Below are positions 20,636-58,540 of a DNA stretch of 64,000 nt, piece after piece. This DNA is from Mytilus edulis (lineage: Eukaryota): assembly GCF_963676685.1 (NCBI RefSeq), contig NC_092357.1, positions 35,526,001 through 35,590,000 of the forward strand. Direction: 5' to 3'. Positions within the stretch are counted from its first letter, which is position 1. The number at the start of each line of letters is the position of its first letter. A program made the translations under genes and the position numbers. A model generated the notes under the pieces. It was not told where the DNA came from. It made no database searches and worked only from the letters and a program-made list of their open reading frames with translations.

Positions 20636-22822
20636 CAAATATAATTAAACATTGTAAAACAAACCACATAAAATGAAGATAATTTAAACGAGACTGAAAG
20701 AAAGTGACAGAAAAGACTTTAAATTTTGATAATTATTGAGCACTGGAACATCATCTGTGTCATTAAGATAGTCAGGATATTTCAGATTACTTAGCAGCCA
20801 CATGATACAATCTTGATATATATTTATAAGTCGATGGAAAATACACAGATTGGACTGTTAAAACAAAATGTAACATGGTAAAAGTAGTTTGTTTGAAAAA
20901 GGTTATTTTCACGAATTGTTCACCTAATCTATGCAAGTACTTTCACCTTTAAGGGTTTACTTTTACAAAGTATGACTTGGATGGAGAGTTGTCTCATTCG
21001 CACTCAAACCACATCTTCTTATGTTTATTAACTGTATGTTGAAAATTTTAACTATATGCAGTACACATTGTGTTACCTACATGTAGCGCAACTTTACTAT
21101 TGAAATCCTAAAGTCATCCATGCCGCAACTTTACATGATTAGAAAATTTAAATATTAAAAATTAACACCTACAAAAAACTGGATTTGTTGGCGTTACTTA
21201 ATGAAAGAGCAAAAGATTTTTTGCTTTTTGATTATCACCTCCAAGAAATTTTCACCAGATGTTTAGCTTCCTGTTTAACTCCTTCTTTAATAGTGTATTT
21301 GTTGACGTGATTTGAACCTAAATAAAAAAAAAGTAGATCGGAGCCTTCTTCGATACAAACTGGAATGGTAAACACTTTGTTCAAACAAATATAAATGTAC
21401 AAGTAAAATATTATGTCAAAATATTAAAAGAAAAGACACATTATATTATTACAATCAAAAACTTGACACACTCAATGACCATGATCAAATATAATTAAAC
21501 ATTGTAAAACGAACCACATAAAATTAAGATAATTTAAACGAGACTGAAAGAAAGTGACAGAAAAGACTTTAAATTTTGATAATTATTGAGCACCGGAACA
21601 TCATCTGTGTCATTAAGATAGTCAGGATATTTCAGATTACTTAGCAGCCACATGATATAATCTTGAGATATATTCATAAGTCGATGGAAAATACACAGAT
21701 TGGACTGTTAACACAAAATGTAACATGGTAAAAGTAGTTTTTTTGAAAAAGGTTATTTTCACGAATTGTTCACCTAATCTATGCAAGTACTTTCACCTTT
21801 AAGGGTTTACTTTTACAAAGTATGACTTGGATGGAGAGTTGTCTCATTAGCACTCAAACCACATCTTCTTATGTTTATTAACTGTATGTTGAAAATTTTA
21901 ACTATATGCAGTACACATTGTGTTACCTACAAATGTACATGTAGCGCAACTTTACTATTGAAATCCTAAAGTCATCCATGCCGCAACTTTACATGATTAG
22001 AAAATTAAAATATTAACAATTAACACCTACAAAAAACTGGATTTGTTGGCGTTACTTAATGAAAGAGCAAAAGATTTTTTGCTTTTTGAATATCACCTCC
22101 AAGAAATTGTCAGCAGATGTTTAGCTTCCTGTTTAACTCCTTCTTTAATAGTGTATTTGTTGACGTGACTTGAATCTCAATTAAAAATAAGTAGATCGGA
22201 GCCTTCTTCGATACAAACTGGAATGGTAAACACTTTGTTCAAACAAATATAAATGTACAAGTAAAATATTATGTCAAAATATTAAAAGAAAAGACACATT
22301 ATATTATTACAATCAAAAACTTGACACACTCAATGACCATAATCAAATATAATTAAACATTGTAAAACTAACCACATAAAATTAAGATAATTTAAACAGA
22401 ACTGAAAGAAAGTGACAGAAAAGACTTTAAATTTTGATAATTATTGAGCACTGGAACATCATCTGTGTTATTAAGATAGTCAGGATATTTTAGATAACTT
22501 AGCAGCCACATGAAACAAGCTTGAGACATATTCATAAGTCGATGGAAATTACACTGATTGGACTGTTAACATGGTAAAAGTAGTTTGTTTGAAAAAGGTT
22601 ATTTTCACGAATTGTTCACCAAATCTATGCAAGTACTTTCACCTTTAAGGGTTTATTTTTACAAAGTATGACTCGGATGGAGAGTTGTCTCATTGGCACT
22701 CAAACCACATCTTCTTATGTCTATTAACTGTATGTTGAAAGTTTAAACTATATGCAGTACACATTGTGTTACCTACATGTAGCGCAACTTTACTGTTGAA
22801 ATCCTAAAGTCATCTATGCCGC
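20636..22822. repeat. Tandem array, ~850-858-bp unit, about 2.6 copies
   Basis: Unit start CAAATATAATTAAACATTGTAAAAC at 20636, 21486 and 22344; high identity; non-coding. Confidence 0.95.
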
Positions 22823-38519: not shown

Positions 38520-38527
38520 TATATAAA
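38520..38527 (+). promoter_or_regulatory. Candidate TATA box of the Ig/C-type lectin gene
   Basis: TATATAAA about 80 bp upstream of a consensus donor (TCG|GTGAGT at 38607/38608); this would define a short non-coding first exon of about 38550-38607. Confidence 0.45.
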
Positions 38528-38549
38528 TCAAATGTGCTATCAACTAGAT

Positions 38550-38607
38550 AAGATATTGACGATGACCCAGTTCTAAAATCATTAAATACGTATTCTTCTA
38601 TATATCG
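38550..38607 (+). other. Putative non-coding exon 1 (5' UTR) of the Ig/C-type lectin gene
   Basis: Ends at a GTGAGT donor. The ATG-bearing exon starts with a strong acceptor (ttttttttcag|G at 40599/40600), so an upstream exon is expected. Start position is approximate. Confidence 0.4.
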
Positions 38608-38754
38608 GTGAGTACCGTTTTAAATACACTTCACGTTTAACCATACATTTTATCTATGAGCTTTTCAACGTTCTATATTTAAGGCGTAACGAACTTTAGA
38701 TTTAGCTTACACAAAGAATACATAAATGAGGAAATATAACTACATTATAACATG

Positions 38755-38955
38755 TTCTAGCCTGCCAATACTGAGGCTATACCAGGTGCGTTCGTCTCAA
38801 ATTTTAATTGTCTAGAATTGCCAGTCTTACTGCCAAAGGTTGGTGGTTCTCTATGGGTTTTCAAGCTTCCTCCACCCCATTAAAACGGGTTAAAACGATA
38901 AAGCCAAGAATGTTGAAAGTGGCATTGAACACCCACAACCTATCAATAAATAAAC
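38755..38955 (+). mobile_element. Degenerate V-type SINE fragment
   Basis: GGTGGTTCTCTATGGG...GCTTCCTCCACC...GTTGAAAGTGGCATT, similar to the 23110-23375 element. Confidence 0.55.
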
Positions 38956-40618
38956 GTATTTAAGAAATTGTATATTTATTTACAAAACCACTATTCTTTA
39001 ATACAATATCCATATTATGCTAGTTTAAACTCAGTCAAATGCTGTGTCCACGCTATCCAAACAACGAAGCTGCGCGTACTAGACGCAGAACATTTATTTC
39101 AGTTAGTTTGATTTAAACTGGAGAGAATTTTGGCAAACAGTTTATGCTTTCATTACCTTTATACATTAAAGCTGCAAGTTAACCTTAATCATATTTTTTA
39201 GATCCGACTAATTAAACTATAGAGATCAACCCGTACAATGTAATTGTTTAATTTTTTTTTTCTTGTTATCCAAAACCCAATAAAGTTATGTTATATACTA
39301 TTTATCCTTACTCTCTCGATTTCTTGAATGAATTCGAATTTGTTTATACCTCAATGTTGTATTTGTCCAACAATTGTTAATCCTGCTTCAATAAAGATGC
39401 AAACAGGATAATGCTCGTTTCAAAGAACATGTAAATTATCCAGTCGTTCACTCAACCAGTCTAAAAGGAAAGATTGGTTAGTAGATAGCTCCATTGTATT
39501 TGAGTTCCTCTTTCTTAACCCTTTCCAATCGATGACGATGACTTTCTCTATTTCTAACTGGTAGATGACGACTTTGGCATTCGCCAAAACCGCTTGAAGC
39601 CATACTCCGGTCGTCTCCTGACAAAATATGAAATAATTGTATCATACAAGATCTCTGGTGCCAGTTTGCACAATATTTTTATGCTAAAAAATTGAAGACA
39701 TATTTTTTTTCATTTTGTCCGAATCACCAGAAAAAAATACTGAACCAAATTCTTCACAAACCACTCTCTTTTTGTCTTTGGGTGGATCAATTTTTTTGGC
39801 AGATATAGGATATTCATTGTACAGTCTTATAACTCCGAAGCATTAAACAACGAGTATTTGCAGAGTCTCCTTCTTTTGCAACTGAGTAATGATAGTTGCT
39901 CTTACACAGAGTAGGTAACCGGCCAAACATGATACATACTTTAGGTATTTTACCTCATTTCATGGGAAAGTTATCAAAGTTAAGCAGAAGGTCAAATTCA
40001 TTTGTTGTAAACATTTGGAAGATCAACATATCTGTTTTGTTGATTTCACATGAACTTGATTTAATTTTTATGGTTTATTGGTCATTTTAATTTTTTTGGT
40101 TATCCTTTTGCAAACATGTTCTCTTTGCCTGTCTTTGTATTAATGTTTAAGATTTCAATGAGCACAATCTATGTATATTAACTGATAGATTATAAAGCCG
40201 GGGATTTTCAACTCATAAATTACTAATACATGTAGTTCTTAATTTATTCTTTCAAAGATACAAACATTTGTTTTGAAGTTTGCTTTACCTGAAGAATTCT
40301 TATAAAAAGCAAGTTATAACCGTTCTTATTTTACTCAATAGACTAAACAAGCATTTTAAAAACAACGTTTTTCTCCATATTTTACTGATAAATGAATCTC
40401 TTTTTGCAGTTAACATTTAGTTAGAGCTGGTCAATCATTATTTCATTTCTATTATTTAGACAACATCTTACTATTTCACATTACTCTGAAAACCTGCCAG
40501 TTTTTCTCTTGTTAGTGCATGTGTATTGTACATTTCCACTTTAATACTAAATGCATTTTTCAATAGCTACAGAAATTTGTATTTTTTGCTTTTTTTCAGG
40601 TCCTCAAATCACTGGAAC

Positions 40619-40697
40619 ATGTTTTTTCTCTCAGTCTTTCGTGCTTTGTTATTTACGATATTGTACCAGCAATTTCCTGTAGTTGTATACTCTCAAA
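40619..40697 (+). CDS. Ig-Ig-CTLD lectin (CREP/VIgL-like), coding exon 1: signal peptide MFFLSVFRALLFTILYQQFPVVVYSQ
   Basis: Acceptor at 40599, ATG at 40619, hydrophobic N-terminus ending VYS-Q, perfect phase-1 donor AAA|GTAAGT. Confidence 0.85.
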
Positions 40698-41442
40698 GTA
40701 AGTTTCGAACATAAAAAATGATATAATTAATATGTATAGTTAATTTCCATTGCTCCTTTTTCTTCTTTTGTCAAATGAGGAATGACCATGATATTACTTG
40801 TCCTGGCGAAAAAACCATCAGTCCAAATTGCTCAAGTTATTTCTGTACTTTATGAACAAAGATAATTTTTATTATGTTAAGTTTTGCATTTCCACGATGT
40901 AATACCCAAAAGGTTCCCAAATGTAAGCAAAATTGCCCATATTAATTCTTGGAGCGATAGTATTCTTTTTGAAATCATTGTTTGCGTATGAATACAGAAT
41001 TTGGTTATTTTTTTACCAACAAAACTTTCTCTCAAATGTATAAGTGGCTAAACACAATAAAAACTAGCTAAATATTGTCTTGCTTTTCTTGCTTTTCTTA
41101 TTTGTTTGAGATTTAAAAATCAATGATATCTAAGATGTATCGTCGTGTGTTGTCTTCAGACGTTGTTGGCTGTCGTTGTCGATGTCTTCTTTGCACAAAT
41201 CGACGGAACCTATTAGGCAAATTGGAACATCGTCATTGTAGTACATTTCATCTTGTTTAACAAACTTGTCAGATTATCCCATCTACCAACCAACAGTGAC
41301 TACACAAACAACGATAGACGAGAAGATTAATAAATAAGTCAGCTCTGCTATATTTAATCGTTGATTCCTCAAAGGAGTTTAGAACTTAAATGATGTTTAA
41401 GAGATTTCCCTTTTAAAAAAATGTTTCCATTTGTTATTTCAG

Positions 41443-41757
41443 CTTTAACACTGACTGTTGAAACTTCTCCATTTAAATACGGAAATGAGGTGACATTAAA
41501 ATGTTTATACTCTGGACCAATAACATGTTGTTCATCCTCTTCAAGGGTTTGGAGACGTGATGGAACATACATTATGAGTGATGGTGTTCAAGTTGATAAT
41601 ACAAAAAAATACGAAGAGAGAGTTAATACCGCAGGCCATTATTTTGAATTGAAAATATTCAACCTTGAGGAGTCAGATTTCGGTAAAGTATTTCAGTGTC
41701 AGTATGGTTTCTCAACCAGCAATTCCGTTACTTTAACAAAGGATTTTACTCATGAAC
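41443..41757 (+). CDS. Ig-Ig-CTLD lectin, Ig domain exon copy 1
   Basis: 315-nt phase 1-1 exon (tttcag|...GAAC|GTAAGT). Ig hallmarks: VTLKC, RVW, FELKIFNL, SDFGKVFQC. Confidence 0.9.
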
Positions 41758-42407
41758 GTAAGTATTGATGTTATGTTAATCAAACAAGATTTTCAAGCTA
41801 CTTGTTTAAGGAATCATTGATGTTTAGAACTCAAATTTAAATTTTAGGTTGGATTTTTGTTAGGAAAGTTGTATAATCCTCGATAGCTGGGAAAACAGTT
41901 ATATAACTTTAATCTGTACTCGGAATTCAAACATGACAAAATATGTGCTCCATATAATGAATTAAGTGTTTTGATCGTTTGAAATCTGAGTTTTAGTACG
42001 ATCGGAATGTTTATGATCGCAAGGCCTTATCATGACCCCATTTTTATTGATACATGCTTTTCTTATTTGTTTGAAATTTAAAAATCAATGATATCTAAGA
42101 TGTTTCGTCGTGTGTTGTCTTCAGACGTTGTTGGCTGTCGTTGTCGAAGTCTTCTTAACCCATCTCTACGGAACCTAATAGGCAAATTGGAACATCGTCA
42201 TTGTAGTACATTTCATCTTGTTTAACAAACTTGTCAGATTATCCCATCTACCAACCAACAGTGACTACACAAACAACGATAGACGAGAAGATTAATAAAT
42301 AAGTCAGCTCTACTATATTTAATCGTTGATTCCTCAAAGGAGTTTAGAACTTAAATGATGTTTAAGAGATTTCCCTTTTAAAAAAATGTTTCCATTTGTT
42401 ATTTCAG

Positions 42408-42722
42408 CTTTAACACTGACTGTTGAAACTTCTCCATTTAAATACGGAAATGAGGTGACATTAAAATGTTTATACTCTGGACCAATAACATGTTGTTCAT
42501 CCTCTTCAAGGGTTTGGAGACGTGATGGAACATACATTATGAGTGATGGTGTTCAAGTTGATAATACAAAAAAATACGAAGAGACAGTTAATGCTGCAGG
42601 CCATTTTTTTGAATTGAAAATATTCAACCTTGGGGAGTCAGATTTCGGTAAAGTATTTCAGTGTCAGTATGGTTTCTCAACCAGCAATTCCGTTACTTTA
42701 ACAAAGGATTTTACTCATGGAC
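42408..42722 (+). CDS. Ig-Ig-CTLD lectin, Ig domain exon copy 2
   Basis: Near-identical 315-nt phase 1-1 exon with intact splice sites (GGAC|GTAAGT); 5 amino-acid differences from copy 1. Confidence 0.85.
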
Positions 42723-43631
42723 GTAAGTATTGATGTTATGTTAACCAAACAAGATTTTCAAGCTACTTGTTAAAGGACATCATTGATGTTTAGAACTAAA
42801 ATTTAAATTTTAGGTTGGATTTTTGTTAGGAAAGTTGTATAATCCTCGATAGCTGAGAAAACAGTTATATAACTTTAATCTGTACTCGGAATTCAAACAT
42901 GACAAAATGTGTGCTCCATATAATGAATTAGGTGTTTTGATCGGTTGATCTGAGTTTTAGTACGATCGGAATGTTTATGATCGCAAGGTCTTATCATGAC
43001 CCCATTTTTATTGATACATGTATGGAGTTTTGAACAAAAGTTAAAGGGTTATTCTATTTTTGTGGTATGGTAAGATAAGAGAAAATTATAAAAAGCAAAT
43101 TTGACTATCTATAAAACGGCAACATTTGTCGTCAACTCCTTATATGGCCATTTGTTTGCATCTTTGATAAAAAGTATAGTAGATTAAATTTTAATCAAAC
43201 AATGATGATATTCACTGACCGTTACAGAGTACTGACTTCTACTTTGAGCTGGTGATAACCTTCGGAACAAACAGTCTACAAGCAGATAAATCGACCATGT
43301 GGTAGTAATAGCATTACTGCTACATACTTACTGCACAAGTTGTGTAATTCACCATGTCTCTTTATTGGTGTTCGCACCAAAACATAAAAAAGAAAACACC
43401 AAACCTGAAGAGCCGATCAAACCAAAAAAAGTGATCTCAAGTAGAACAAAATCAGGATAATTAATCATATTTTAAATAATCACATTCCTTGATTTAAGAT
43501 GATTTTCAAAGTTTCTTAAAAATCAACCAGTACCTATCTTTTTGGCAACACCATCACCATGCATAAAGATAACCTGTAAACAGAAATAACGATATGTAGA
43601 CTGATATTCAGATGTGATTTCATATTTTCAG

Positions 43632-43732
43632 ATAGCCTGTATGACTTGTGTCCATCGAACTGGACCAGGTTTGCTGATTCTTGTTACTATCCCAGCACTC
43701 ATGGGCAAGTTCATAACTTCCACACTGCAGCG
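43632..43732 (+). CDS. Ig-Ig-CTLD lectin, CTLD exon a (SLYDLCPSNWTRFADSCYYPSTHGQVHNFHTAA)
   Basis: ttttcag| acceptor, phase 1-0, long-form CTLD start CPxxWxxFxxSCY, donor GCG|GTAAAT. Confidence 0.9.
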
Positions 43733-44453
43733 GTAAATTATGTTTTAAACTAATAAGATTTCCAAATGTTATGTTATCAATGCAATTAAGCCAACAGATG
43801 AGCAGCACAAAGTTAATTGATTGGTTGCATCGATTGTGTCAGATATTTTGAAAATAACCGTGCAATTTCACTTTTCTGTTTGCAGTTTTCAGTCAATTTT
43901 TAAAAATGCAGTTGAACATGTGAATTCGTTTGGTACATGTATCAGTATTGTTTTTACATAAGTCTTGTGAATGCTTTTGTCATCAATTATTGTTCAAGTG
44001 TTCGAAATACTAAAATAAAAGAAAACAACACGCTTAATAATTTATTGCGTCCGATGCGCTTTTCTTGATTTACCTTCATCAGGAACGCTAAAAGCCAAAC
44101 ATTTGAAATCCGAAGATGTATAAATACCGAAAATCGACTAAAATTTTCAACTAGTGTCAACCTATTTTTCGTACCATTATGTATGACCTTGACACGTATA
44201 TATGTCTTAAAGTTCCCTACCAATCTGTTACAATCAAAGCATTTTCTTTTTTGCGTAGTATTGACTAGCTTTATTATTCTTCGACTTTTTGTATAATTAT
44301 GTTCTTTTTGAGGACACACATCCAGCATTCTATCTTTATTTTTAGCTCTTCGGTGCTTTGGTTGTCCTATATGAACGGCAATGAATGAAACAAAGTATAT
44401 ATGAAATATTTCATATTTTAATGGAAATTTTTAAATGCAATTAAATTTTACAG

Positions 44454-44538
44454 ACATTTTGTAATGGACATAATTCGCACTTGGTGGAATTAGATTCCCC
44501 AGAGGAACAAGTATTTATGGAGAAGTTGATCAACAAAA
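44454..44538 (+). CDS. Ig-Ig-CTLD lectin, CTLD exon b (TFCNGHNSHLVELDSPEEQVFMEKLINK)
   Basis: ttttacag| acceptor, phase 0-1, typical C...HLVxxxSxEExxF motif, donor AAA|GTAAGA. Confidence 0.9.
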
Positions 44539-44632
44539 GTAAGATAAATAAAGGCAACAGTAGTATACGTCTGTTCTAAGGTCGTAAATCGATAGATGGA
44601 AAACAACTCTTGGTTACATTTATATATGTATC

Positions 44633-44995
44633 AGTATTGTTTCCATGTTCAGTAGACCGTGAAATTGGGGTCAAACTTTAATTTGGCATTCAAATTAGAA
44701 ATATAATAGCATAAGGAACATGAGTACTAAGTTTCAAGTTGATTAAACTACAACTTCATCAATAACTACCTTGACCAAAAACTTTAACTAAAAACTGTAA
44801 TCTGAACTATGCACTATCATTTTCCATGTTCAGTGGACCATGACATTGAGGTCAAACTTTAATATGGCATTGAAAATATAACGATCATATCATGGGGAAC
44901 ATATGTACTAAGTTTCAAGTTGATTGGACTTCAAATTCATCAAAAACTACCTTGTCCAAAAACTTTAACCTGAAGCCGGACAAACGGACGCACGT
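44633..44995. repeat. Two units of a ~180-bp satellite followed by GACA/GACG repeats (Helentron-associated, resembles the main Mytilus satellite)
   Basis: TTCCATGTTCAGT.GACC.TGA.ATTG.GGTCAAAC...GTACTAAGTTTCAAGTTGATT at 44641 and 44822. Family identity is from recognition only. Confidence 0.7.
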
Positions 44996-45054
44996 ATTAT
45001 GTTGGTTTATGTAATGTATTCGTTTTTAATTTGTATTTAGTTAATACTTCGGTT

Positions 45055-45875
45055 GTATCATGTATATCTATTATATAGTCATTTTATAAAATTTACTGTT
45101 TGCATAAGTATAAATAATTTTAAATAATAAGGATGTTCTTATCCCAAGCAGAAAACTCTAGTCGTATTAGGCACAATTTTTTTGAAATTTTCTTCCTAGT
45201 GCTGTTCAACTTTTTACTTGTTTTTGACTTTCGAACTTTTTCCATCTGAGCGTCACTGGTTAGTCTTATGTCGACGAAACGCACTTCTGGCGTATTTAAT
45301 TTTTATCTGGTGCCTATTGTTAGCTATTGTTCGTGTGTTTCTCTGTCCTATATGTTCTCCTATTTATTTGTATTGTAGTCCTGTAATGTTATGTTGTCAT
45401 TTTCATGTTATATTTAACATTGCCATTAAAGCGGGAGGTTTGGCATGCCACAAAACTAGGTTTAACCCACCATTTTTTTTCTTTAAAAAATTTCATGTAC
45501 CAAGTCAAGAAAATGGCCATTGTTAAATTATTGTTCGTTTCTGTGTGTGTTACATTTTTACGTTGTGTTTCTGTTGAGTCGTGTGTTTCCTCTTATATTT
45601 GAGTGTGAACTCACATAGCTATAAGACGTGTCGTGATACCTTTCTATCCCAAATTCATGTATTTAGTTTTGATGTTATATTTGTTATTCTCATCGGATTT
45701 TGTCTAATGCTTAGTTCTGTGTGTGTTACATTTTAAGATTGTGTTTCTGTTGTGTCGTTGTTCTCATCTTATATTTATTGCGTTTCCCTCAGTTTTAGTT
45801 TGTAACCCGAATTTGTTTTTTTTTCTATCGATTTATGAGTTTCGAACAGCGGTATACTACTGTTGCCGTCATTTA
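45055..45875 (+). repeat. Composite PLE-associated repeat with a degenerate hammerhead (45248-45293)
   Basis: GAGCGTCACTGGTTAGTC...GACGAAACGCAC (mutated core) inside a lectin-gene intron. Confidence 0.6.
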
Positions 45876-46754
45876 ACTACACATAGTATTAATAAATATG
45901 ACTTTAAGGAAGTGTTATCTTTATAGTAGATAACATCGTCTTTCCTGTTGTAAATTCTCCTCCTTTGTGGTGATATTATGTGGTAAAATTAAGCATTCCT
46001 TAGCAAACAGCCTTAATAATTTTTGACAAAAGTGAGATCCCTAGAGTAAAAAAAATCCCTAAGAACTCGAAAAACGAAATCCTGTCTTACAACACCAAAT
46101 CCAACAACAACATGTATATTGGTTAAATTCTAAATTTAGAGTACAGTAATCGTGCTACAGATTTTTATGACTGCAAGACTGAAGTTTAAGATTTGAGAGT
46201 TGTGGATGAATGCTACTCCAATCGAAACAAATCTGGTCAGAAAAAATATACATCTATATATAGGAGCATGAAAAACCAACAACAGTACCACATGTGAGGC
46301 AAAATCTACTATTATTCGACAGCACCTGAGCTCACCCCCAGTTTTTGGTTGGGTTTATCTTGATCAGTCTGTATTTTATGTTTTGTTTTTTGTACTGTTT
46401 TTGTTCCGTTTGTAAGCCATGGCGTTGTCAGTATAGTTTTGACTAATTAGTTTAAATAAAATTGAGAACGGAAATGGGGAATGTGTCAAAGAGACAACAA
46501 CCCAACCATAGAAAAGACAACAGCAGAAGGCCACCAATAGGTCTTCAATGCAACGAGAAATTCCCGGACCCGGAGGCGTCCTTCAGCTGACCCCTAAACA
46601 AATATATATACTTGTTCAGTGTTTACAATGTGCAAAACCAAAATTGTATATTAGGCATAAAACAACAAATCAAAGTACACGTACGTCACATTCGGTTTCA
46701 AATGTTCGTTTAGTATCCTCGGCTTATTTGTTATTATTCTGATATAATTTTTAG

Positions 46755-46885
46755 CTAATTCATTACATGATTTTTGGATTGGTGCTAACGACATTGATCA
46801 CGAGGGTATTTGGAAGTGGAATGGTTCTAACACTGTATTGAATTACAGCCACTGGTGTACTGGAGAACCGAACAATGCATTACAG
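46755..46885 (+). CDS. Ig-Ig-CTLD lectin, CTLD exon c (NSLHDFWIGANDIDHEGIWKWNGSNTVLNYSHWCTGEPNNALQ)
   Basis: tttttag| acceptor, phase 1-0, WIG, EGxWxW and EPN motifs, donor CAG|GTATGC. Confidence 0.93.
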
Positions 46886-46904
46886 GTATGCATGAAATGT
46901 AGTT

Positions 46905-47045
46905 CAGTGAAAACTGTCTAAATCGAACCTCTTTGGGATTTGTTCAGTTTTGGCAGATAAGATTTGATATGATTAGACTAATTTATATATATGTTTTCGA
47001 CAGGTTGTCGTTTTCTGCAAGATTCAAATAAGACAGGTGTCACTG
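46905..47045. mobile_element. Short Tc1/mariner-type MITE remnant
   Basis: CAGTGAAAACTGTCT ... AGACAGGTGTCACTG|TA termini. Confidence 0.5.
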
Positions 47046-47312
47046 TACATCTAAGTCACAATATGTAAAATCAAAACAGTTATAGGTCAAAGTACGGACT
47101 TCCAACACAGAGCCATGGCTCACATCAAACAGTAAGCTATGAAGGGCCCTAAAATGACTAATGTAAAACCATTTAAACGAGAAAACCACGGTCTAATTTT
47201 TATAAAAACGAGAAACGAGAAACAAGTATTTACCACGATAACTACTTAAACATCAGGATCCTGACAAAGAAATCGCTGTTTTTAAATCATTGATTTCGTT
47301 CTTTTTCTTCAG

Positions 47313-47416
47313 GGTGAAGATTGTGCAGCTCTAAATGTCAACAATATTCCAGGCAAAAATTTCTGCTGGAATGATTACAGTTGCAAAAGTTATCATAACT
47401 TTGTATGTGAGAAAAG
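47313..47416 (+). CDS. Ig-Ig-CTLD lectin, CTLD exon d (GEDCAALNVNNIPGKNFCWNDYSCKSYHNFVCEK)
   Basis: Polypyrimidine acceptor, phase 0, EDC, WND and VCEK motifs. Ends at AG|GTAAAA (phase 2), or reads through to TAA at 47418-47420. Confidence 0.93.
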
Positions 47417-48520
47417 GTAAAATTCAAATAAAGATAGGTATAGATTATCAGGTTGATCAGTAGATCAAAAAGCCTTCATTTTGTGTCGAGCAGCTGATAT
47501 TTTACAATATCAATATGCAGATAAAATGTTTACAATGTGCAAATTCAGTATTTTATATTAGGCATAAAACCAACAAATCAAAGTACACGTACGTCACATT
47601 CGGTTTCAAACGGAAAGGGATCGAAAAATATTCCTTTAATTTTTACATTAGTATAAAGTAATTTCATTGCAAAACAAAATTCCTAAGCTTAAACATATAT
47701 CTTAATGGTTAAAAAAGACTAATCTTATTCCAATTGGAGTTTCAATATTATATTTTGTAAATTTAAGATTACATGGTTACTGAAACAGTGCAGAGGATAA
47801 ATTTGATGACAATTCGATTGGTTAACACCCAAAGATAGTTTCAGTTAGAATCCAGTGATGGTTATTGTTGACGGGTGCCACATGTGGAGCAGGATCTGCT
47901 TACCCTTCCGGAGCACCTGAGATCACCCCCAGTTTTTATTGGGGTTCGTATTGCTTAGTCTTTAGTGTTCTCTGTTTGTCTCTATTTATATTCTAGCCAT
48001 GGCGATGTCAATTTATTTTCAATCTATGGGTTTGACTGTCCCTGAGGTATCTTTCGCCCCTCTTTTCTTATCGTATATGCAATGAAATGGTGTATGATAT
48101 TTTAATTGTAAAATACTGGATACAATTTAACTCGTGTCAAGTGTTTCTTGGTTTAAAACAACGAGACATTCTGCACATTTTATTGAAAAGTGCAAATTAA
48201 ACAAATACTAACGGAGAAAACAGTATCATGCATGTAGACGGCTTTAAAACGACCGATTAAACGATAAACATCACTTCATTTGGTACAAAATTCTAACCTC
48301 ATTCAATATAAAAATATTTGACAAAAGCTTTTTTGAAACATTATAAACAAATTCCAACATTTGTATGATATTTATTACATGGAAACCTGACTAAACCAAA
48401 TATTGTGTAAACAAAACATCTGTCTAAACCTTACAGCAGGTTAAATCCCGAAGAGATTTGGTGTAGACAGGTTTTACTGTAATAAGGTCGCATAATAATA
48501 CAGATTATTTTTTATTTCAG

Positions 48521-48602
48521 TATTTCGGCAGTAAGTACAACAACCAATACGTATACTCTCCCAACAGGAACACTGGAATGGAGAACAGTAGCAAGAAAAT
48601 GA
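48521..48602 (+). CDS. Ig-Ig-CTLD lectin, terminal exon (ISAVSTTTNTYTLPTGTLEWRTVARK*)
   Basis: Strong acceptor tttttatttcag|, phase 2 matching the upstream donor, TGA stop, AATAAA at 48743-48748. Confidence 0.6.
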
Positions 48603-49111
48603 AATTATTGTTTTAAAGATATAAGTTTACGTTTTTATGTTAATATTGTAATTTCTTAATTCCGTATTTCCTTCAAATTTGCTGCATTTAGATCTGTTTC
48701 AAAATAATTAGGAAGCAGTGAGATGGCTTAAAAAAATGGTATAATAAACAATCATTGAGAAAACCAATCAGTCAGGAAACACAAAAAAGAACCACAAAAC
48801 AGACGTTCATTCTAAAAATACGACGCGTTTATAAAGTTTACTGAAATATGAGAAACAACTATTTATGCCGCTAGCTTTAAAGTAGATATATATACTTTGG
48901 AATTCAAACAATGATTGAAAAAATAACAGAAAAGACAAACTAATACTACCACACAAGTATAGTCCTCCGATCTCAGAGCACCCATAGTCCTGTTATTTGA
49001 CATTTTTCGTCAAGTTTCAAGCGTTATTCAAAAGAAGCAAAAAAAAATTTTTGTTTAAGTCCATATACATGTTTCAAAATAATATCAGTACATGTACATT
49101 TTACCAATATA

Positions 49112-55039: not shown

Positions 55040-56772
55040 ATGCAAAGTGCCGGTGAATTGTCAGATAGCCAAAATCGGAATTCAAATAATGGAATAAGAA
55101 GAAATATAAGTTAAAAAGGGAACCAAGCATATGTCACTGGAAAGAAACAATATTTTAAAGATTGTACTGTTCGAATTGAAGGTATACAAACTCAGAATGT
55201 TAAAAATATTACTGTTATTGAATCAGTTGAAGAAGTCACAGGTCTGAATACTGTTTTGGCAGTTGTTCAAAATGATGCATTGTCCTATGATGTTACTCTT
55301 GATTCGAAGGAGGATGCCGTGAAAATATTAAATGGAATAGAGATCAATAGATGTGACTACAACTGTAGTCTTATCTTTTCTGATACAACCGTTGTTTCAT
55401 TCATGAAATTACCTTTGTTTATTTAAGATGATGAAATTAGAGACAAATTACGTCAAAAGGGAATACTCATTAAATCTCCCATCTATCGCCGTGCTATACC
55501 GGGAACGCAAGTAGCAGATAGAACAAGGTTTGTTAAGTGTAAAATCCCACCAGGATTTGTTGCCTTACCATGGACAATGGGATTCGAGATTGGTACAACA
55601 ATGAAATACTACCGTTTTGTTCATAATAATCAGACTAAAGTCTGTTCACTTTGCCTATCGCCTGATCATATTCAACGTGACTGTCCGCATTATGTCTGCG
55701 ATGGTTGTGGTAATCATGGACACTCAGTTCGGAAATGTAGAGCTGCAAAAATCTGCCTTTAAAGTGTGTATGTGAAGCAGTTGAAGTAAATGGTAATTAT
55801 GATGGTGGAAATAAGGATGAGGTACATGTAGGAGCTAAGGATTTCTTTGACAAAGATGATAGACAAGGTTTTGGGAGACCCCAAAAAATCCAAGATACAA
55901 ATAATCAAGGTCATGAGAATGATTGTCCATACTGTGGGCATTTGGTATGTATTTGTGAGTGCATCAGCTGTGGTAATGCTGAATGCACTTGCCCTTGTGG
56001 AAAATGTGAAAAATTTCCCTGTCAATGTAGTATTGTTTGTTATCATTGTAATAATGATCCATGTGTATGTCCATGTCCAGATTGTAAACATGCTCCTTGT
56101 GAGTGTGTATGTGAAAAGTTTTAACAAACTGTTTGTAACTGTATAGACTCTGATGAAAACGAAAACACAGAAGTAGCATTTAAAAAAGATGAAACTGTTA
56201 AAAATATATATGAACCTATGAATGAACAAAATGATTATGAAAAAATGATGTATCTTTGAATGTTGTTATTGAAAATCATCACACTGAAAATGTAGACAGT
56301 AGAAAAAGGAAAATTGTAATTTCTGATGAAAATTGTAATGATGATAATGTTGAGGCTGTTTGTCAGACTGAGATGAATGATGTCATCTCTTTGTGTGAAG
56401 TAAATGACATAGGGAGAGATGAGCATATAGATAATAAAAATGTGAGAAGAGAAGCCTCTCCTTCTGGTGAAAAAATGGATACAGGAGGGGAGGACAGGGA
56501 CACTTGTGGTGATTATACCTCGGGTTGTGATGAGGTCACAGCCGGGGTAGATAATGTAGACTCCTCTGTCTGTGATGAGAGATGAAAGCTGGGACGGAGG
56601 AGGTTTTGTTAAGAATAATCTGATAGAGGTAGTTTCAAAAAACACAAATGCATTAACTGCCAAGCAATTACGAAGAGTTCGAAAAAAACAAGCAAGAAGG
56701 AATGAAAGGGTAAAGTCAAAATTAGATGGGAAACAAAATGCTGGTAAAAAAAACCTCAGATACTTAAAATGA
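55040..56772 (+). pseudogene. L1/Tx1 ORF1 remnant (RRM-like region, two CCHC knuckles, Cys-rich repeat, acidic tail)
   Basis: From ATG 55040, with in-frame stops: VLAVV..YDVTL, VVSFMKLPLFI, PGTQVADRTRFV, CSLCLSPDHIQRDC, CDGCGNHGHSVRKC. Confidence 0.8.
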
Positions 56773-56821
56773 TGGCAATGTTTAAATTTATCATGTTTAT
56801 ATTACTTATCTTACTTTTGAA

Positions 56822-58540
56822 AATGGTATTAATATGTACACATAGCACATAATTGTAATGGTCTGAAAAATGTAAATAATTTTCAAAATTATATATCTGT
56901 ATTATACGATAGGCATATTAGTTTTTCCCTGTTACAGGAAACATTTTGGGATGATGACTATGTCAATGGAATTAGACATATGTATGAAGGTGTAATATAT
57001 GAAAGTAATGGTAAAAATTGTCGACAAGGTGTAGCTATTATGATAAGTAATAACTATAAAGAAAGTTCTAAGTTAGTTTTTAAAGATGACAATGGTTTTA
57101 TACATGTTACATATGATTATCTAGGAAAAGTGTATAATTTAGTTTCTTTATATGCTCCAAATAATTATTCAGAAAGAAAATAATTTTTTATGTTTGTTAG
57201 AGAATATATATCAAGTTTAGAAAACCTCATTGTTGGAGGTGATTTTAATACCACTTTAAGTAGTTTAGATAGAGGTGGTTTATCAAAACATATTTGTGAT
57301 GAAGCTTATAAAGAGTTATTTGATATAATTCATTCATGTAATGTATATGATGTATGGAGAAGTAGAAATGAAAATAAAAAGATATTTTCTTGGAAAAGAA
57401 TTACAAATGGTATGTTACAACAAAGTCATATTGACTATTTTCTTATTAGTCGAATGTTGTCATCAAATGTACAAAATGTGTCTTATAACGAAACTAGTTT
57501 TAGTGACCATACGTATATTATAATGAATTTCAATTTTTGTACTGTTGAAAAGGGTTTTAAATAACACCTTATTACATAATGATGAATATGTTCAAACAGT
57601 AAGGAATATAATATAATTAATGAAGCTGTTCAAAGTTCATTGTATACTGTTGAACCTCTTGTATGGTGGGATAATCTTAAGTTAAGAATCAAAAGTTCTC
57701 ACAAGTTTTTTCAGTTAATTTGGCAAAAGAAAAAAAGAAAGATTTTTTTAACTTGCAAAATAAAATCCAAAGGATATGTGCCATGCAAGCAGACGGTATT
57801 GCTATAGATGTTACGAAATTAGAAAACTTAAAGCTTGAGTTAAATAATTATGAGTTAGAAAAATGCAAAGGAGCAGTTCTATGATCCAAAGCAATATGGG
57901 CTTCTGAAAGTGATAAGAATACTATTTTTTTTTTTAATTTAGAAAAATACAAGCAAGAAAATAATGCTGTAAAAGAGCTTATGAATGACAAAGGTGATGT
58001 CATTAGTGATACTGATGGTATACTAGATATTGAATATTCTTTTTATAAAAATTTATATTCTTGTGTTAAAGTAGATAATGTGAACATGGAAGAATTCATT
58101 AGTTCTATTGATGTAAAAGTAAATCACAATGATAAAGACATGTGTGATGCAGAAATATTATATGATGAAATTACTGAAGCTTTGATGGCTATGTCAAAAA
58201 ACAAAAGTCCTGGTACAGATGAGCTTACAACAGAGTTTTACTGTAAATTTTTTGATTGTTTAAGAAATATATTATGTCATGTTTATAATAGTATTTATGA
58301 TGAAAATATTATGTCAAGGTCTATGAGAGAAGGTGTTTTAAGCTTAATTTATAAGAAAAAAGGTGATAGAAGAATTTTGAAAAATTATAGACACCCTATT
58401 TTTGTGTCGATAATGGGATAAGACGAGGATGTCCAATAAGTGCCCTTCTCTTTATTTTAGCAGCTGAAACTTTACAATGTAATATTAGAAAAAATGTGAA
58501 TATATCTGGTATTAAAATTCCAAATACCACTGATAAAAAA
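56822..58540 (+). pseudogene. L1/Tx1 ORF2 remnant (APE endonuclease plus partial RT)
   Basis: NCNGL, LQET, GVAIMI, YAPN, GGDFN, IDYFL, SDH; KSPGTDELTTEFY, NYR; then jumps to GIRRGCPISALLFILAAE and stops before the YADD motif. Confidence 0.9.

What the first reader, a model, noticed from the sequence alone, without database searches (positions are those of the whole stretch)
38520..48748. Complete secreted Ig-Ig-C-type-lectin gene hidden from the ORF track
Eight coding exons (79+315+315+101+85+131+104+82 = 1212 nt) splice in frame to 403 aa: signal peptide, two Ig domains, a long-form CTLD with EPN and WND, and a short Thr-rich tail with no transmembrane segment. Ig plus lectin (VIgL: FREP, CREP, GREP) is established mainly from gastropod immunity. 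Here the Ig has a C-x7-CC-x6-W pattern and a terminal CQYGF, and joins the CTLD with no coiled-coil linker. This suggests an independent phase-1 exon-shuffling origin of a variable pattern-recognition molecule. Immune function is inferred.
Basis: partly seen in the sequence, partly recalled or inferred. Interest (0 to 1): 0.8.

Follow-up and report, generated by a model that had tools for sequence, protein, structure and literature searches.

The report
Mussel secreted Ig plus C-type lectin gene
This is a real, transcribed mussel gene that joins an antibody-like (Ig) domain to a calcium-dependent sugar-binding lectin domain, but relatives are already in public databases and it is a single gene, not a variable family.

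Summary
The eight-exon model is correct: 79+315+315+101+85+131+104+82 = 1212 nt, all internal splice sites AG/GT, every frame open. Contigs from four public runs join Ig exon 3 to the lectin exons exactly at the predicted GT..AG sites; one 927-nt contig runs from the Ig exon through exon 7. So Ig and CTLD belong to one transcript.

The gene is not unknown. Orthologues are deposited as "CD209 antigen-like protein A" (Mytilus trossulus) and "COLEC12" (M. edulis), with the Ig part unnamed.

The Ig belongs to a Mytilus-centred V-like family. The family profile matches shark VNAR domains best (E 5.7e-8). Most relatives look like membrane proteins, and only this orthologue group carries a CTLD.

The two Ig exons come from a 965-bp tandem duplication, 97% identical. 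No contig showed an Ig-to-Ig joint, and the RNA evidence fits a one-Ig mRNA in other individuals.

An origin independent of snail CREPs is plausible. "Variable family" is not supported. Immune function is inferred. I never joined the window's exons; public orthologue proteins stood in for the joined model.

The parts
38520..38609 (+).
   Evidence: Sequence only: a TATAAA-like string at 38520 and a GT after 38609. RNA contigs carry up to 111 nt upstream of the Ig exon. That is 13 nt more than the 98 nt from the AG at 40598-40599 to the end of exon 1, which fits a further upstream exon but does not prove it.
40619..40697 (+). Coding exon 1: ATG plus 26-residue hydrophobic leader (putative signal peptide), phase-1 GTAAGT donor
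   Evidence: Maximum mean hydropathy 1.44 over 19 residues. This DNA is unique in the genome apart from the redundant contig C2306. The joint to exon 2 was not observed; no signal-peptide predictor was available.
41443..41757 (+). Coding exon 2: V-like Ig domain, copy 1 (phase 1-1, 315 nt)
   Evidence: Pfam Ig_2 E 0.018, below the cut-off; invariant C20, W36, D78, C85; family profile vs shark VNAR E 5.7e-8.
42408..42722 (+). Coding exon 3: V-like Ig domain, copy 2 (6 nt differences from copy 1, 5 of them amino-acid changing)
   Evidence: Joined to exon 4 in contigs of runs X1, X2 and X3.
41090..43020 (+). Tandem duplication of a 965-bp unit (intron, Ig exon, intron), 97.1% identical
   Evidence: blastn: 962 aligned, 25 mismatches, 2 gaps; the upstream intron part occurs twice.
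43632..43732 (+). Coding exon 4: short linker and start of the long-form CTLD (N-terminal Cys pair)
   Evidence: joints 42722>43632 and 43732>44454; maps to public orthologues.
44454..44538 (+). Coding exon 5: CTLD, Pfam Lectin_C positions 11-35
   Evidence: (E 0.016).
46755..46885 (+). Coding exon 6: CTLD with WIGL-type core and EPN
   Evidence: (Lectin_C 22.7 bits against a cut-off of 22.6). EPN aligns with the EPN of C-type mannose receptor 2 (Endo180), fourth matched stretch.
47313..47416 (+). Coding exon 7: CTLD end with the Glu of Ca site 2, WND and the last three canonical Cys
   Evidence: (E 7.2e-4). WND aligns with macrophage mannose receptor and SRCL chains.
48521..48602 (+). Coding exon 8: Thr-rich 27-residue tail and TGA stop
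   Evidence: Maps to the C-termini of P0003 and P0069. The X1 contig has 109 nt beyond exon 7, enough for this exon, but they were outside the laid stretch.
48745..48750 (+). AATAAA about 140 nt after the stop (possible poly(A) signal)
   Evidence: Sequence only; not tested.

Best explanation
The locus is a single, transcribed gene of a Mytilus mussel. It encodes a soluble chimeric lectin with four parts: a cleavable leader, one V-like Ig domain (two in this assembly's allele, through a recent in-frame 965-bp tandem exon duplication), a short linker, and a long-form C-type lectin domain. The lectin domain has a complete mannose-type Ca2+ site 2 (EPN, a Glu eight residues after the EPN Glu, WND). 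A Thr-rich tail follows.

Shown:
- the exon structure;
- splicing of the Ig exon to the CTLD exons;
- orthologues in M. trossulus and M. edulis;
- membership of the Ig in a Mytilus-centred Ig family of mostly membrane-type proteins whose exons are phase 1-1.

Inferred:
- The protein is secreted.
- The CTLD binds mannose/GlcNAc/fucose-type sugars on microbes or particles in a Ca2+-dependent way.
- The Ig domain adds a second binding or oligomerising surface. The two adjacent Cys in the loop equivalent to CDR1 are candidates for inter-chain bridges, in place of a coiled coil.
- The molecule therefore acts as a humoral or mucosal recognition/opsonin lectin, analogous to snail CREPs and crayfish PcLec3 but assembled independently in the mussel lineage by exon shuffling.
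For: Gene model: all AG/GT, open frames, 1212 nt.

Transcription and splicing:
- Joint 42722>43632 in X1, X2 and X3 (three studies).
- Joints 43732>44454 and 44538>46755 in X1, X3 and X11.
- Joint 46885>47313 in all four runs.
- One 927-nt X1 contig spans Ig exon 3 through exon 7.
- X11 is an RNA library on record.

Orthologues:
- P0069 (XP_063418451.1, M. trossulus) and P0003 (CAG2188039.1, M. edulis) map to the same exon boundaries.
- They score Lectin_C at 72.4 and 75.3 bits.

CTLD on the window's own exons:
- Lectin_C hits on exons 5, 6 and 7.
- EPN and WND align with those of solved mannose-receptor-family and SRCL domains.
- Exons 6 and 7 are the best conserved parts: 97.7% and 100% to M. 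edulis, 90.9% and 94.4% to M. trossulus.

Ig:
- Invariant B-strand Cys, C-strand Trp, Asp and F-strand Cys in 29 family sequences.
- The family profile hits VNAR and antibody V domains, best E 5.7e-8.
- Paralogues P0004 and P0010 pass the Pfam Ig_3 cut-off.

No TM-like segment in any exon after the leader, nor in P0069 or P0003.

Shuffling:
- Paralogous Ig exons have AG/GT sites at or within a few bases of the phase-1 boundaries: 8 of 8 acceptors one codon in, 4 of 8 donors exact.
- Only P0003 and P0069 of 69 family proteins carry a CTLD.
- 0 of 20 regions downstream of paralogous Ig exons hold a CTLD exon, while the control recovered all 5 exons.
Against: Splicing gaps:
- The exon 1 to Ig joint was not observed.
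- The M. trossulus RefSeq model starts with a different three-residue N-terminus and has no leader.
- No Ig-to-Ig joint (41757>42408) is among the 15 joints listed (2 more not shown).
- The bin 41630-41829 has zero depth in all four runs, so the two-Ig protein is unsupported by RNA.

Quality of the RNA evidence:
- Three of the four runs are only guessed to be RNA.
- Contig depths are low (3-16).
- X11, the run on record as RNA, lacks the Ig-to-CTLD joint itself.

Ig call:
- Pfam Ig_2 on the window's exon is below its cut-off (15.7 against 27 bits).

Constraint: of 13 variant rows between RNA contigs and the assembly, 11 change the amino acid. This could mean relaxed constraint rather than function.

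Function: no binding, localisation or expression-by-tissue data. No signal-peptide predictor was run.
Confidence: 0.72

Rival explanations
1. The normal product has one Ig domain. The second Ig exon is a private, recent duplication of this assembly's haplotype, or an assembly artefact of a tandem repeat. It may be skipped or may not exist in most mussels.
For: - The 927-nt X1 contig has one Ig exon flanked by 82 unlaid nt upstream (a length that fits exon 1) and by exon 4 downstream.
- No Ig-to-Ig joint is listed, and depth is zero over the exon-2-specific half in 4 of 4 runs.
- The RNA contigs mix copy-1 and copy-2 letters. For example, they read the copy-1 letter at 42606 in X1, X3 and X11, as expected from a single ancestral-type exon.
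- The M. trossulus model has one Ig.
- The unplaced contig C2306 ends inside the repeat.
Against: - Both the chromosome and C2306 carry two copies. They are 99.99% alike over the last 9.4 kb, so they may be the same haplotype and not independent.
- Each copy has its own changes: 25 mismatches per 962 nt.
- Both copies keep identical AG and GTAAGT sites and an open phase 1-1 frame, so inclusion of both is the default expectation.
- The M. edulis model also holds parts of two Ig exons, the second divergent.
- The laid runs are from other individuals.
Confidence: 0.5
2. The lectin is not an immune receptor. It serves another extracellular task known for bivalve C-type lectins, such as mucosal capture or sorting of food particles, shell-matrix work or gamete recognition.
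For: - The genome holds over 1000 candidate CTLD exons (1012 first-look candidates), so most cannot be dedicated immune receptors.
- PMC10140915 (abstract and discussion passages) reports that bivalve CTL subfamilies are mainly expressed in digestive gland and gills.
- Nothing in my calls gives tissue or challenge data for this gene.
Against: - An EPN/WND site plus an Ig domain is the architecture of proven opsonins such as crayfish PcLec3 (PMC4944128, abstract).
- The excess of amino-acid-changing variants in the Ig exons and exon 5 is typical of host-pathogen interfaces. It is not statistically distinguishable from neutrality here.
Confidence: 0.3
3. The gene is drifting under relaxed constraint, as a dispensable presence/absence gene on its way to loss, and has no important function.
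For: - 11 of 13 variant rows are non-synonymous.
- 5 of 6 differences between the two Ig copies change the protein.
- The M. edulis model is broken up (frame-shifted start, truncated second Ig).
- No orthologue from M. galloprovincialis, M. coruscus or other bivalves surfaced.
Against: - The frame is intact over 1212 nt here and in M. trossulus.
- It is transcribed in four runs from four studies.
- The sugar-binding exons 6 and 7 are 91-100% conserved between species while other parts vary, which indicates purifying selection on the binding site.
Confidence: 0.15

Closest known systems
Public orthologues: XP_063418451.1 'CD209 antigen-like protein A' (Mytilus trossulus) and CAG2188039.1 'COLEC12' (Mytilus edulis)
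   Same: Same gene. They map to the window exon by exon at the same boundaries: 71-94% (M. trossulus) and 86-100% (M. edulis) identity over the CTLD and tail exons, and an Ig exon of the same type.
   Different: The M. trossulus model has one Ig and no leader. The M. edulis model has a frame-shifted start and parts of two Ig exons, the second of a divergent type (55-62% identity) that I did not find in this genome. Neither name nor the Pfam scan records the Ig domain. The window allele has two near-identical Ig exons.
Gastropod VIgL proteins of the CREP type (IgSF plus C-type lectin; Biomphalaria, Aplysia)
   Same: Signal peptide, one or two N-terminal Ig-superfamily domains that standard profile tools barely detect, and a C-terminal CTLD (PMC9334734 passages).
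   Different: CREPs, GREPs and FREPs are described as restricted to Heterobranchia (PMC8878817 passage). Here the Ig comes from a family whose named close members are all Mytilus. The gene is single-copy, not a diversified family. I could not align it directly with snail CREP sequences, because none was returned by a tool.
Crayfish PcLec3 (Ig-like domain plus CTLD opsonin)
   Same: A small secreted protein with one V-like Ig and one CTLD in tandem. Shown to promote phagocytosis (PMC4944128, abstract and one results passage).
   Different: It is an arthropod protein of 252 residues. No sequence relationship was tested here, and its function has been shown experimentally, unlike the mussel gene.
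Bivalve 'CTLDcps' (CTLD proteins with extra domains) surveyed by Saco et al. 2023
   Same: The survey states that bivalve-specific architectures combine CTLDs with domains including immunoglobulins (PMC10140915, discussion passage).
   Different: That survey depends on domain detection, and Pfam does not call this Ig, so this gene was probably counted as a plain CTL.
Shark IgNAR variable domains (VNAR) and antibody V domains
   Same: These are the best profile matches of the mussel Ig family among solved structures (E 5.7e-8 to 1e-6). They share the B-strand Cys, the C-strand Trp, a KYxE-like C''-D segment and the D-x-G...C F-strand motif. Both are short V domains of about 100 residues with extra Cys in the CDR1-equivalent loop.
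   Different: The resemblance is at the level of a general V-set fold. There is no evidence of rearrangement or of close kinship, and the fold could not be modelled.

Membership tests
C-type lectin domain (Pfam PF00059), Ca2+-dependent mannose-type CRD | Profile match to Lectin_C above the curated cut-off | tested here: met
   Exon by exon: exon 6 scores 22.7 bits (cut-off 22.6), exon 7 20.7, exon 5 16.4. Whole public orthologues score 72.4 and 75.3 bits. The window's joined model was not scanned, by rule.
C-type lectin domain (Pfam PF00059), Ca2+-dependent mannose-type CRD | Long-form cysteine pattern (extra N-terminal pair plus four core Cys) | tested here: met
   Cys counts per exon are 2, 1, 1, 4. 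Read in the translations: the N-terminal pair is in exon 4, and the core Cys are in exons 5 and 7. Two extra Cys sit next to EPN and WND.
C-type lectin domain (Pfam PF00059), Ca2+-dependent mannose-type CRD | Ca2+ site 2 / sugar ligands: EPN, downstream Glu, WND | tested here: met
   All are present. EPN aligns with the EPN of C-type mannose receptor 2. WND and the GEDC segment align with macrophage mannose receptor and SRCL chains. That these residues are the Ca/sugar ligands is established knowledge, recalled by me.
C-type lectin domain (Pfam PF00059), Ca2+-dependent mannose-type CRD | Ca2+-dependent carbohydrate binding | not testable with these tools
   Needs recombinant protein.
Immunoglobulin superfamily, V-like domain | Profile match to a Pfam Ig family above the cut-off | tested here: not met
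   Ig_2 scores 15.7 and 14.5 bits against a cut-off of 27 for the two exons, and no Ig hit appears on P0069 or P0003. Paralogues P0004 and P0010 (E 1.9e-22 and 9.5e-15 to the exon) do pass Ig_3 at 31.4 and 34.1 bits against 30, so membership holds transitively.
Immunoglobulin superfamily, V-like domain | Conserved B-strand Cys, C-strand Trp, and D...C on the F strand | tested here: met
   Invariant C20, W36, D78 and C85 (also R34, K55, E58) in 29 aligned family sequences.
Immunoglobulin superfamily, V-like domain | Similarity to solved Ig domains | tested here: met
   The profile of alignment A1 against PDB sequences gives VNAR chains at E 5.7e-8 to 2e-6, then scFv/Fab V domains, titin, pIgR and CD4.
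Immunoglobulin superfamily, V-like domain | Two-sheet Ig fold | not testable with these tools
The Atlas did not hold the sequence.
Gastropod VIgL / CREP family | Architecture: leader, 1-2 IgSF domains, C-terminal CTLD | tested here: met
   The leader is called by inspection and hydropathy only.
Gastropod VIgL / CREP family | IgSF domains homologous to those of snail FREP/CREP | tested here: inconclusive
   The full HMMER scan gave 68 representatives. I looked up names for 15 proteins, and 8 carried a name: 6 Mytilus, 1 bird and 1 hemichordate giant Ig protein, no gastropod. 54 of 69 proteins were not looked up, and no snail CREP sequence was available for direct comparison.
Gastropod VIgL / CREP family | Multi-gene, diversified ('variable') family | tested here: not met
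   CTLD exon 6 has no paralogue above 56% identity. Only the two orthologues among 69 family proteins carry a CTLD. 0 of 20 downstream regions hold a CTLD exon; 11 further planned regions could not be fetched.

The most novel reading that the evidence does not exclude
The V-like 'CC' Ig domain may mark an unrecognised, Mytilus-specific family of germline-diversified recognition modules.

- At least 37 paralogous phase 1-1 exons exist in this genome, 26 of them on this chromosome between about 29.6 and 35.0 Mb. Most relatives are membrane proteins.
- The lectin gene would be the soluble effector of this family.
- Its Ig cassette appears to be in flux between haplotypes and species: one exon in M. 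trossulus and in the RNA contigs, two near-identical exons here, and two divergent exons in M. edulis. Variation is mostly amino-acid changing.

On this reading it is a bivalve analogue of FREP/VCBP-type variable receptors that arose independently of the snail VIgLs.
Probability: 0.15. Interest if true: 0.7.

Novelty: new variant of a known kind. Interest (0 to 1): 0.4.

Why it matters
Ig-plus-lectin molecules (FREP, CREP, GREP) are the textbook example of diversified innate recognition in molluscs. They are described as confined to heterobranch snails (PMC8878817 passage).

A transcribed mussel gene with the same architecture shows that this design arose more than once, by shuffling of symmetric phase-1 exons. 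It is built from a mussel-specific Ig family that domain scanners miss.

It also shows that domain-based censuses of bivalve lectins under-count such chimeras, since the deposited orthologues are named as plain C-type lectins.

The practical value is modest. It is one gene, already in databases, without functional data. It does offer a clean test case:
- a one-Ig versus a two-Ig allele;
- a V-like domain with two adjacent Cys;
- an EPN-type CRD.

With these one can ask what an Ig domain adds to a soluble lectin.

Tried and rejected
- First exon coordinates for exons 4 and 5 were one base off and gave stops. One search corrected them.
- Haplotig idea rejected. I took contig C2306 for an alternative haplotype with a broken second Ig exon (one search showed a TGA and a split match). 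Alignment showed it is the same sequence as window 13453-42870 (99.8-99.99%). Its only difference in the last 9.4 kb is one base in a T-run at 42604. It is redundant, not independent, evidence.
- Leader origin unresolved. Similarity of the exon 1 peptide to the N-termini of family proteins was not significant (best z 2.7 against 200 shuffles), so I cannot tell whether the leader came with the Ig or with the CTLD. The DNA of exon 1 and intron 1 has no paralogue.
- Intron 6 as a transposon-made intron rejected. Only its middle (about 47042-47272) belongs to an abundant repeat (5989 first-look candidates, 78-86% identity). The flanks are unique.
- The word-index protein search with the M. trossulus orthologue returned only the M. 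edulis protein (1 of 168 candidates at E <= 1e-5). It added nothing on other bivalves.
- The literature search 'VIgL' + 'Mytilus' returned 53 papers, mostly by accidental word starts. Among the 15 listed, none reports a VIgL or CREP in a mussel. Searches likewise gave no paper describing an Ig-CTLD lectin in Mytilus. Subscription journals and supplements are not covered.
- Selection on the Ig copies or alleles: the counts are too small (5 non-synonymous to 1 synonymous between copies; 11 to 2 among variant rows) to reject neutrality. No claim is made.

Full report
SETTING. The window is G000:C14:35526001-35590000 of a 1.37-Gb assembly in 2368 contigs. It is AT-rich, with GC 0.28-0.37. No tool names the organism. 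The nearest named proteins are all from Mytilus species, so I treat it as a Mytilus mussel.

OBSERVATION. I rebuilt the model from the sequence. My first coordinates for exons 4 and 5 were one base off. The corrected exons on the + strand are:
- 40619-40697
- 41443-41757
- 42408-42722
- 43632-43732
- 44454-44538
- 46755-46885
- 47313-47416
- 48521-48602

The lengths are 79+315+315+101+85+131+104+82 = 1212 nt. Every internal acceptor is AG after a pyrimidine tract and every donor is GT (five of seven are GTAAG). Each exon is open in the frame fixed by the phase carried in.

- a 26-residue hydrophobic leader;
- C-x7-CC-x6-W and CQYGF in both Ig exons;
- the N-terminal Cys pair of a long-form CTLD in exon 4;
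- EPN at the end of exon 6;
- a Glu eight residues after the EPN Glu, and WND, in exon 7;
- a tail with 8 Thr in 26 residues.

No 19-residue window after the leader has a mean hydropathy above 0.41.

IS IT ONE TRANSCRIBED GENE? Yes for the part I could test. I laid the contigs of four public runs from four studies on 41430-47429.
- The Ig-to-CTLD joint 42722>43632 (GT..AG, skipping 909 nt) is present in X1, X2 and X3.
- Joints 43732>44454 and 44538>46755 are present in X1, X3 and X11.
- Joint 46885>47313 is present in all four.
- One 927-nt contig of X1 covers Ig exon 3, exons 4, 5, 6 and 7 in order, with 82 and 109 further nt at its two ends.

Caveats: three runs are only guessed to be RNA, though intron-exact joints argue for RNA. 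X11 is an RNA library on record but lacks the Ig-to-CTLD joint. Depths are low (3-16).

Independently, two public proteins returned by the searches map to the window at the same exon boundaries. These are XP_063418451.1 'CD209 antigen-like protein A' of M. trossulus (P0069, 275 aa) and CAG2188039.1 'COLEC12' of M. edulis (P0003, 278 aa). The core claim stands.

ONE OR TWO Ig DOMAINS? The two Ig exons lie in a tandem duplication of a 965-bp unit: 962 nt aligned, 97.1% identity, introns included. The exons differ at 6 nt, 5 of which change the protein.

The RNA evidence does not show a two-Ig transcript:
- No 41757>42408 joint is among the 15 listed (2 more are not shown).
- The bin with the copy-1-specific letters (41630-41829) has zero depth in all four runs.
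- The contigs that reach the 5' edge of an Ig exon continue for 82-111 nt that did not lie on the stretch. This fits exon 1, which was outside the stretch, rather than another Ig exon, which was inside it.
- The contigs mix copy-1 and copy-2 letters, as a single ancestral-type exon would.

Gene models differ too. The M. trossulus model has one Ig. The M. edulis model has the second half of one Ig exon followed by the first half of a second. That second exon is of a divergent type, 55% identical to ours, and resembles the orphan ORF P0002 (62% identical). I did not find that type in this genome.

The unplaced contig C2306 also carries both copies. But it is essentially the same sequence as the window, with one T-run base different in 9.4 kb, so it is not independent. 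Both copies here keep identical splice sites and an open symmetric frame, so a two-Ig mRNA is the default expectation for this allele. It is untested, and the laid runs come from other individuals.

WHAT THE DOMAINS ARE.
CTLD:
- Pfam Lectin_C matches exons 5, 6 and 7 separately at E 0.016, 1.7e-4 and 7.2e-4. Exon 6 alone just reaches the cut-off.
- The whole orthologues score 72-75 bits.
- The closest solved relatives are mannose-receptor-family CTLDs, CL-P1/SRCL, Mincle, CD23 and DC-SIGN.
- The EPN of exon 6 aligns with the EPN of C-type mannose receptor 2. The GEDC...WND...C...C segment of exon 7 aligns with SRCL, macrophage mannose receptor and mannose-binding protein A.
- By established knowledge of C-type lectins (recalled), EPN plus Glu plus WND form Ca2+ site 2 and select mannose/GlcNAc/fucose-type sugars.
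- Exons 6 and 7 are also the most conserved between species.

Ig:
- Pfam sees Ig_2 only at E 0.018-0.044, below the cut-off.
- A full HMMER scan of 1.84 billion representatives found just 68 relatives.
- In an alignment of 29 of them, the B-strand Cys, C-strand Trp, an Asp and the F-strand Cys are invariant.
- The alignment's profile hits shark VNAR domains best (E 5.7e-8), then antibody V domains, titin, pIgR and CD4.
- Two paralogues pass the Pfam Ig_3 cut-off over the homologous stretch.

So it is a divergent V-like Ig domain.

WHERE THE Ig CAME FROM.
- I looked up 15 relatives, and 8 carried names. The six closer ones are Mytilus (M. galloprovincialis, M. coruscus, M. trossulus, M. edulis). 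The two others are giant Ig-repeat proteins of a bird and a hemichordate at E about 1e-5.
- Of 37 relatives of 200-600 aa, 26 have at least one TM-like segment and 14 have three or more. The two CTLD-bearing orthologues have none.
- In this genome the exon has at least 37 paralogous exons at 25-38% identity. Of these, 26 lie on this chromosome between 29.6 and 35.0 Mb, 0.5-6 Mb from the gene.
- In seven loci examined (8 plus-strand exon hits) an AG acceptor lies one codon inside the position expected for phase 1, so phase 1 is kept. A GT donor sits exactly at the expected phase-1 position in four hits and a GTAAGT lies within a few bases of it in the other four.
- Only the two orthologues among 69 family proteins contain a CTLD.
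- None of 20 ten-kb regions downstream of paralogous Ig exons holds a CTLD exon (best E 1.6). The same search recovered all five downstream exons in the window control. Eleven further planned regions could not be fetched.
- CTLD exon 6 has no close paralogue: the best identity is 56%, among 100 matches. The genome has over 1000 candidate CTLD exons.
- In many of the listed CTLD matches, including the closest paralogues of exon 6 (C12:32280558-32280773, C14:71230705-71230920), the C-terminal half of the CTLD sits in one exon. Here it is split by a 427-nt intron whose middle is a common repeat.

The picture is a single chimeric gene. It was made when a symmetric phase-1 Ig exon of a local mussel family came to lie between a leader exon and a CTLD. 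It is not a diversified family.

MECHANISM.
Shown: gene structure, splicing of Ig to CTLD, domain identities, conservation of the sugar-site exons.
Inferred: a secreted soluble lectin whose CTLD binds mannose-type glycans with Ca2+. Its Ig domain adds a second interaction surface or drives oligomerisation through the two adjacent Cys in the CDR1-equivalent loop, there being no coiled coil. The protein would thus act as a recognition or opsonin lectin.

Variation:
- Of the 13 variant rows between the RNA contigs and the assembly, 11 change the amino acid. They concentrate in the Ig exons and exon 5.
- This fits either diversifying or relaxed selection. The numbers are too small to tell.

COMPARISON WITH THE KNOWN.
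- The architecture equals that of snail CREPs, whose Ig domains are likewise hard to detect (PMC9334734 passages), and of crayfish PcLec3, a proven opsonin (PMC4944128 abstract and a results passage).
- A review-type passage states that FREPs, GREPs and CREPs are restricted to Heterobranchia (PMC8878817).
- A census of bivalve CTLD proteins mentions immunoglobulins among the extra domains of bivalve-specific architectures (PMC10140915 discussion; section 2.4 read in full; supplements closed).
- My four literature searches listed no paper describing an Ig-CTLD lectin of Mytilus. Subscription journals are not covered.
- The gene works like a CREP but fails two membership features: it is not a diversified multi-gene family, and no snail relative surfaced. 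I file it as an independently assembled variant of a known kind. It is already present, with no mention of the Ig part, in public annotation.

VERDICT.
- Interest is moderate (0.4). It is a tidy example of convergent Ig-lectin assembly, with an unexpectedly VNAR-like, mussel-specific Ig module. But it is one gene, already deposited, with no functional data, and the eye-catching two-Ig feature may be allele-specific.

Noticed in passing
G000:C14 about 29.6-35.0 Mb (outside the window); loci L006-L012: A cluster of at least 26 paralogous V-like 'CC' Ig exons on this chromosome, often in adjacent pairs. AG/GT sites lie at or within a few bases of the phase-1 boundaries. Public relatives are mostly uncharacterised Mytilus proteins with one to seven TM-like segments, and several get no Pfam hit at all (e.g. 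P0009, P0024).
   Followed up: partly
window 44630-45029 and 46430-46629 (intron 5): Two short stretches have enormous summed contig depth in all four runs (up to 165,250 against 3-16 on the exons). They show many rearranged joints and loose ends. These look like very abundant, probably transcribed, interspersed repeats inside the intron.
   Followed up: no
window 47042-47272 (intron 6): A repeat of about 200-230 bp from a very abundant family (5989 first-look candidates genome-wide, 78-86% identity) sits in the middle of the intron that splits the C-terminal half of the CTLD.
   Followed up: partly
G000:C2306 (29,405 bp), equal to window 13453-42870: An unplaced contig duplicates 29 kb of the window at 99.8-99.99% identity and ends inside the second copy of the Ig duplication. 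Its only difference in the last 9.4 kb is one base of a T-run at 42604, which would shift the frame of Ig exon 3. It is probably an assembly leftover or a homopolymer error.
   Followed up: yes
window 20636-22822: Another tandem duplication (units of about 850 bp, 93-95% identical) appeared as cross-matches when C2306 was compared with the window.
   Followed up: no
window 57190-58421 (+), with GC skew 0.31 at 56001-58000: A LINE-like retroelement remnant. The ORF at 57190-57561 matches Pfam Exo_endo_phos_2 (endonuclease-reverse transcriptase, E 2.8e-6). The next ORF got no Pfam hit.
   Followed up: partly
public protein P0003 (M. edulis) and ORF P0002: The M. edulis gene model holds part of a second, divergent Ig exon type (55-62% identical to the window's Ig) between the first Ig and the CTLD. 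That type was not found in this genome, which suggests presence/absence or turnover of Ig exons at this locus among Mytilus.
   Followed up: partly
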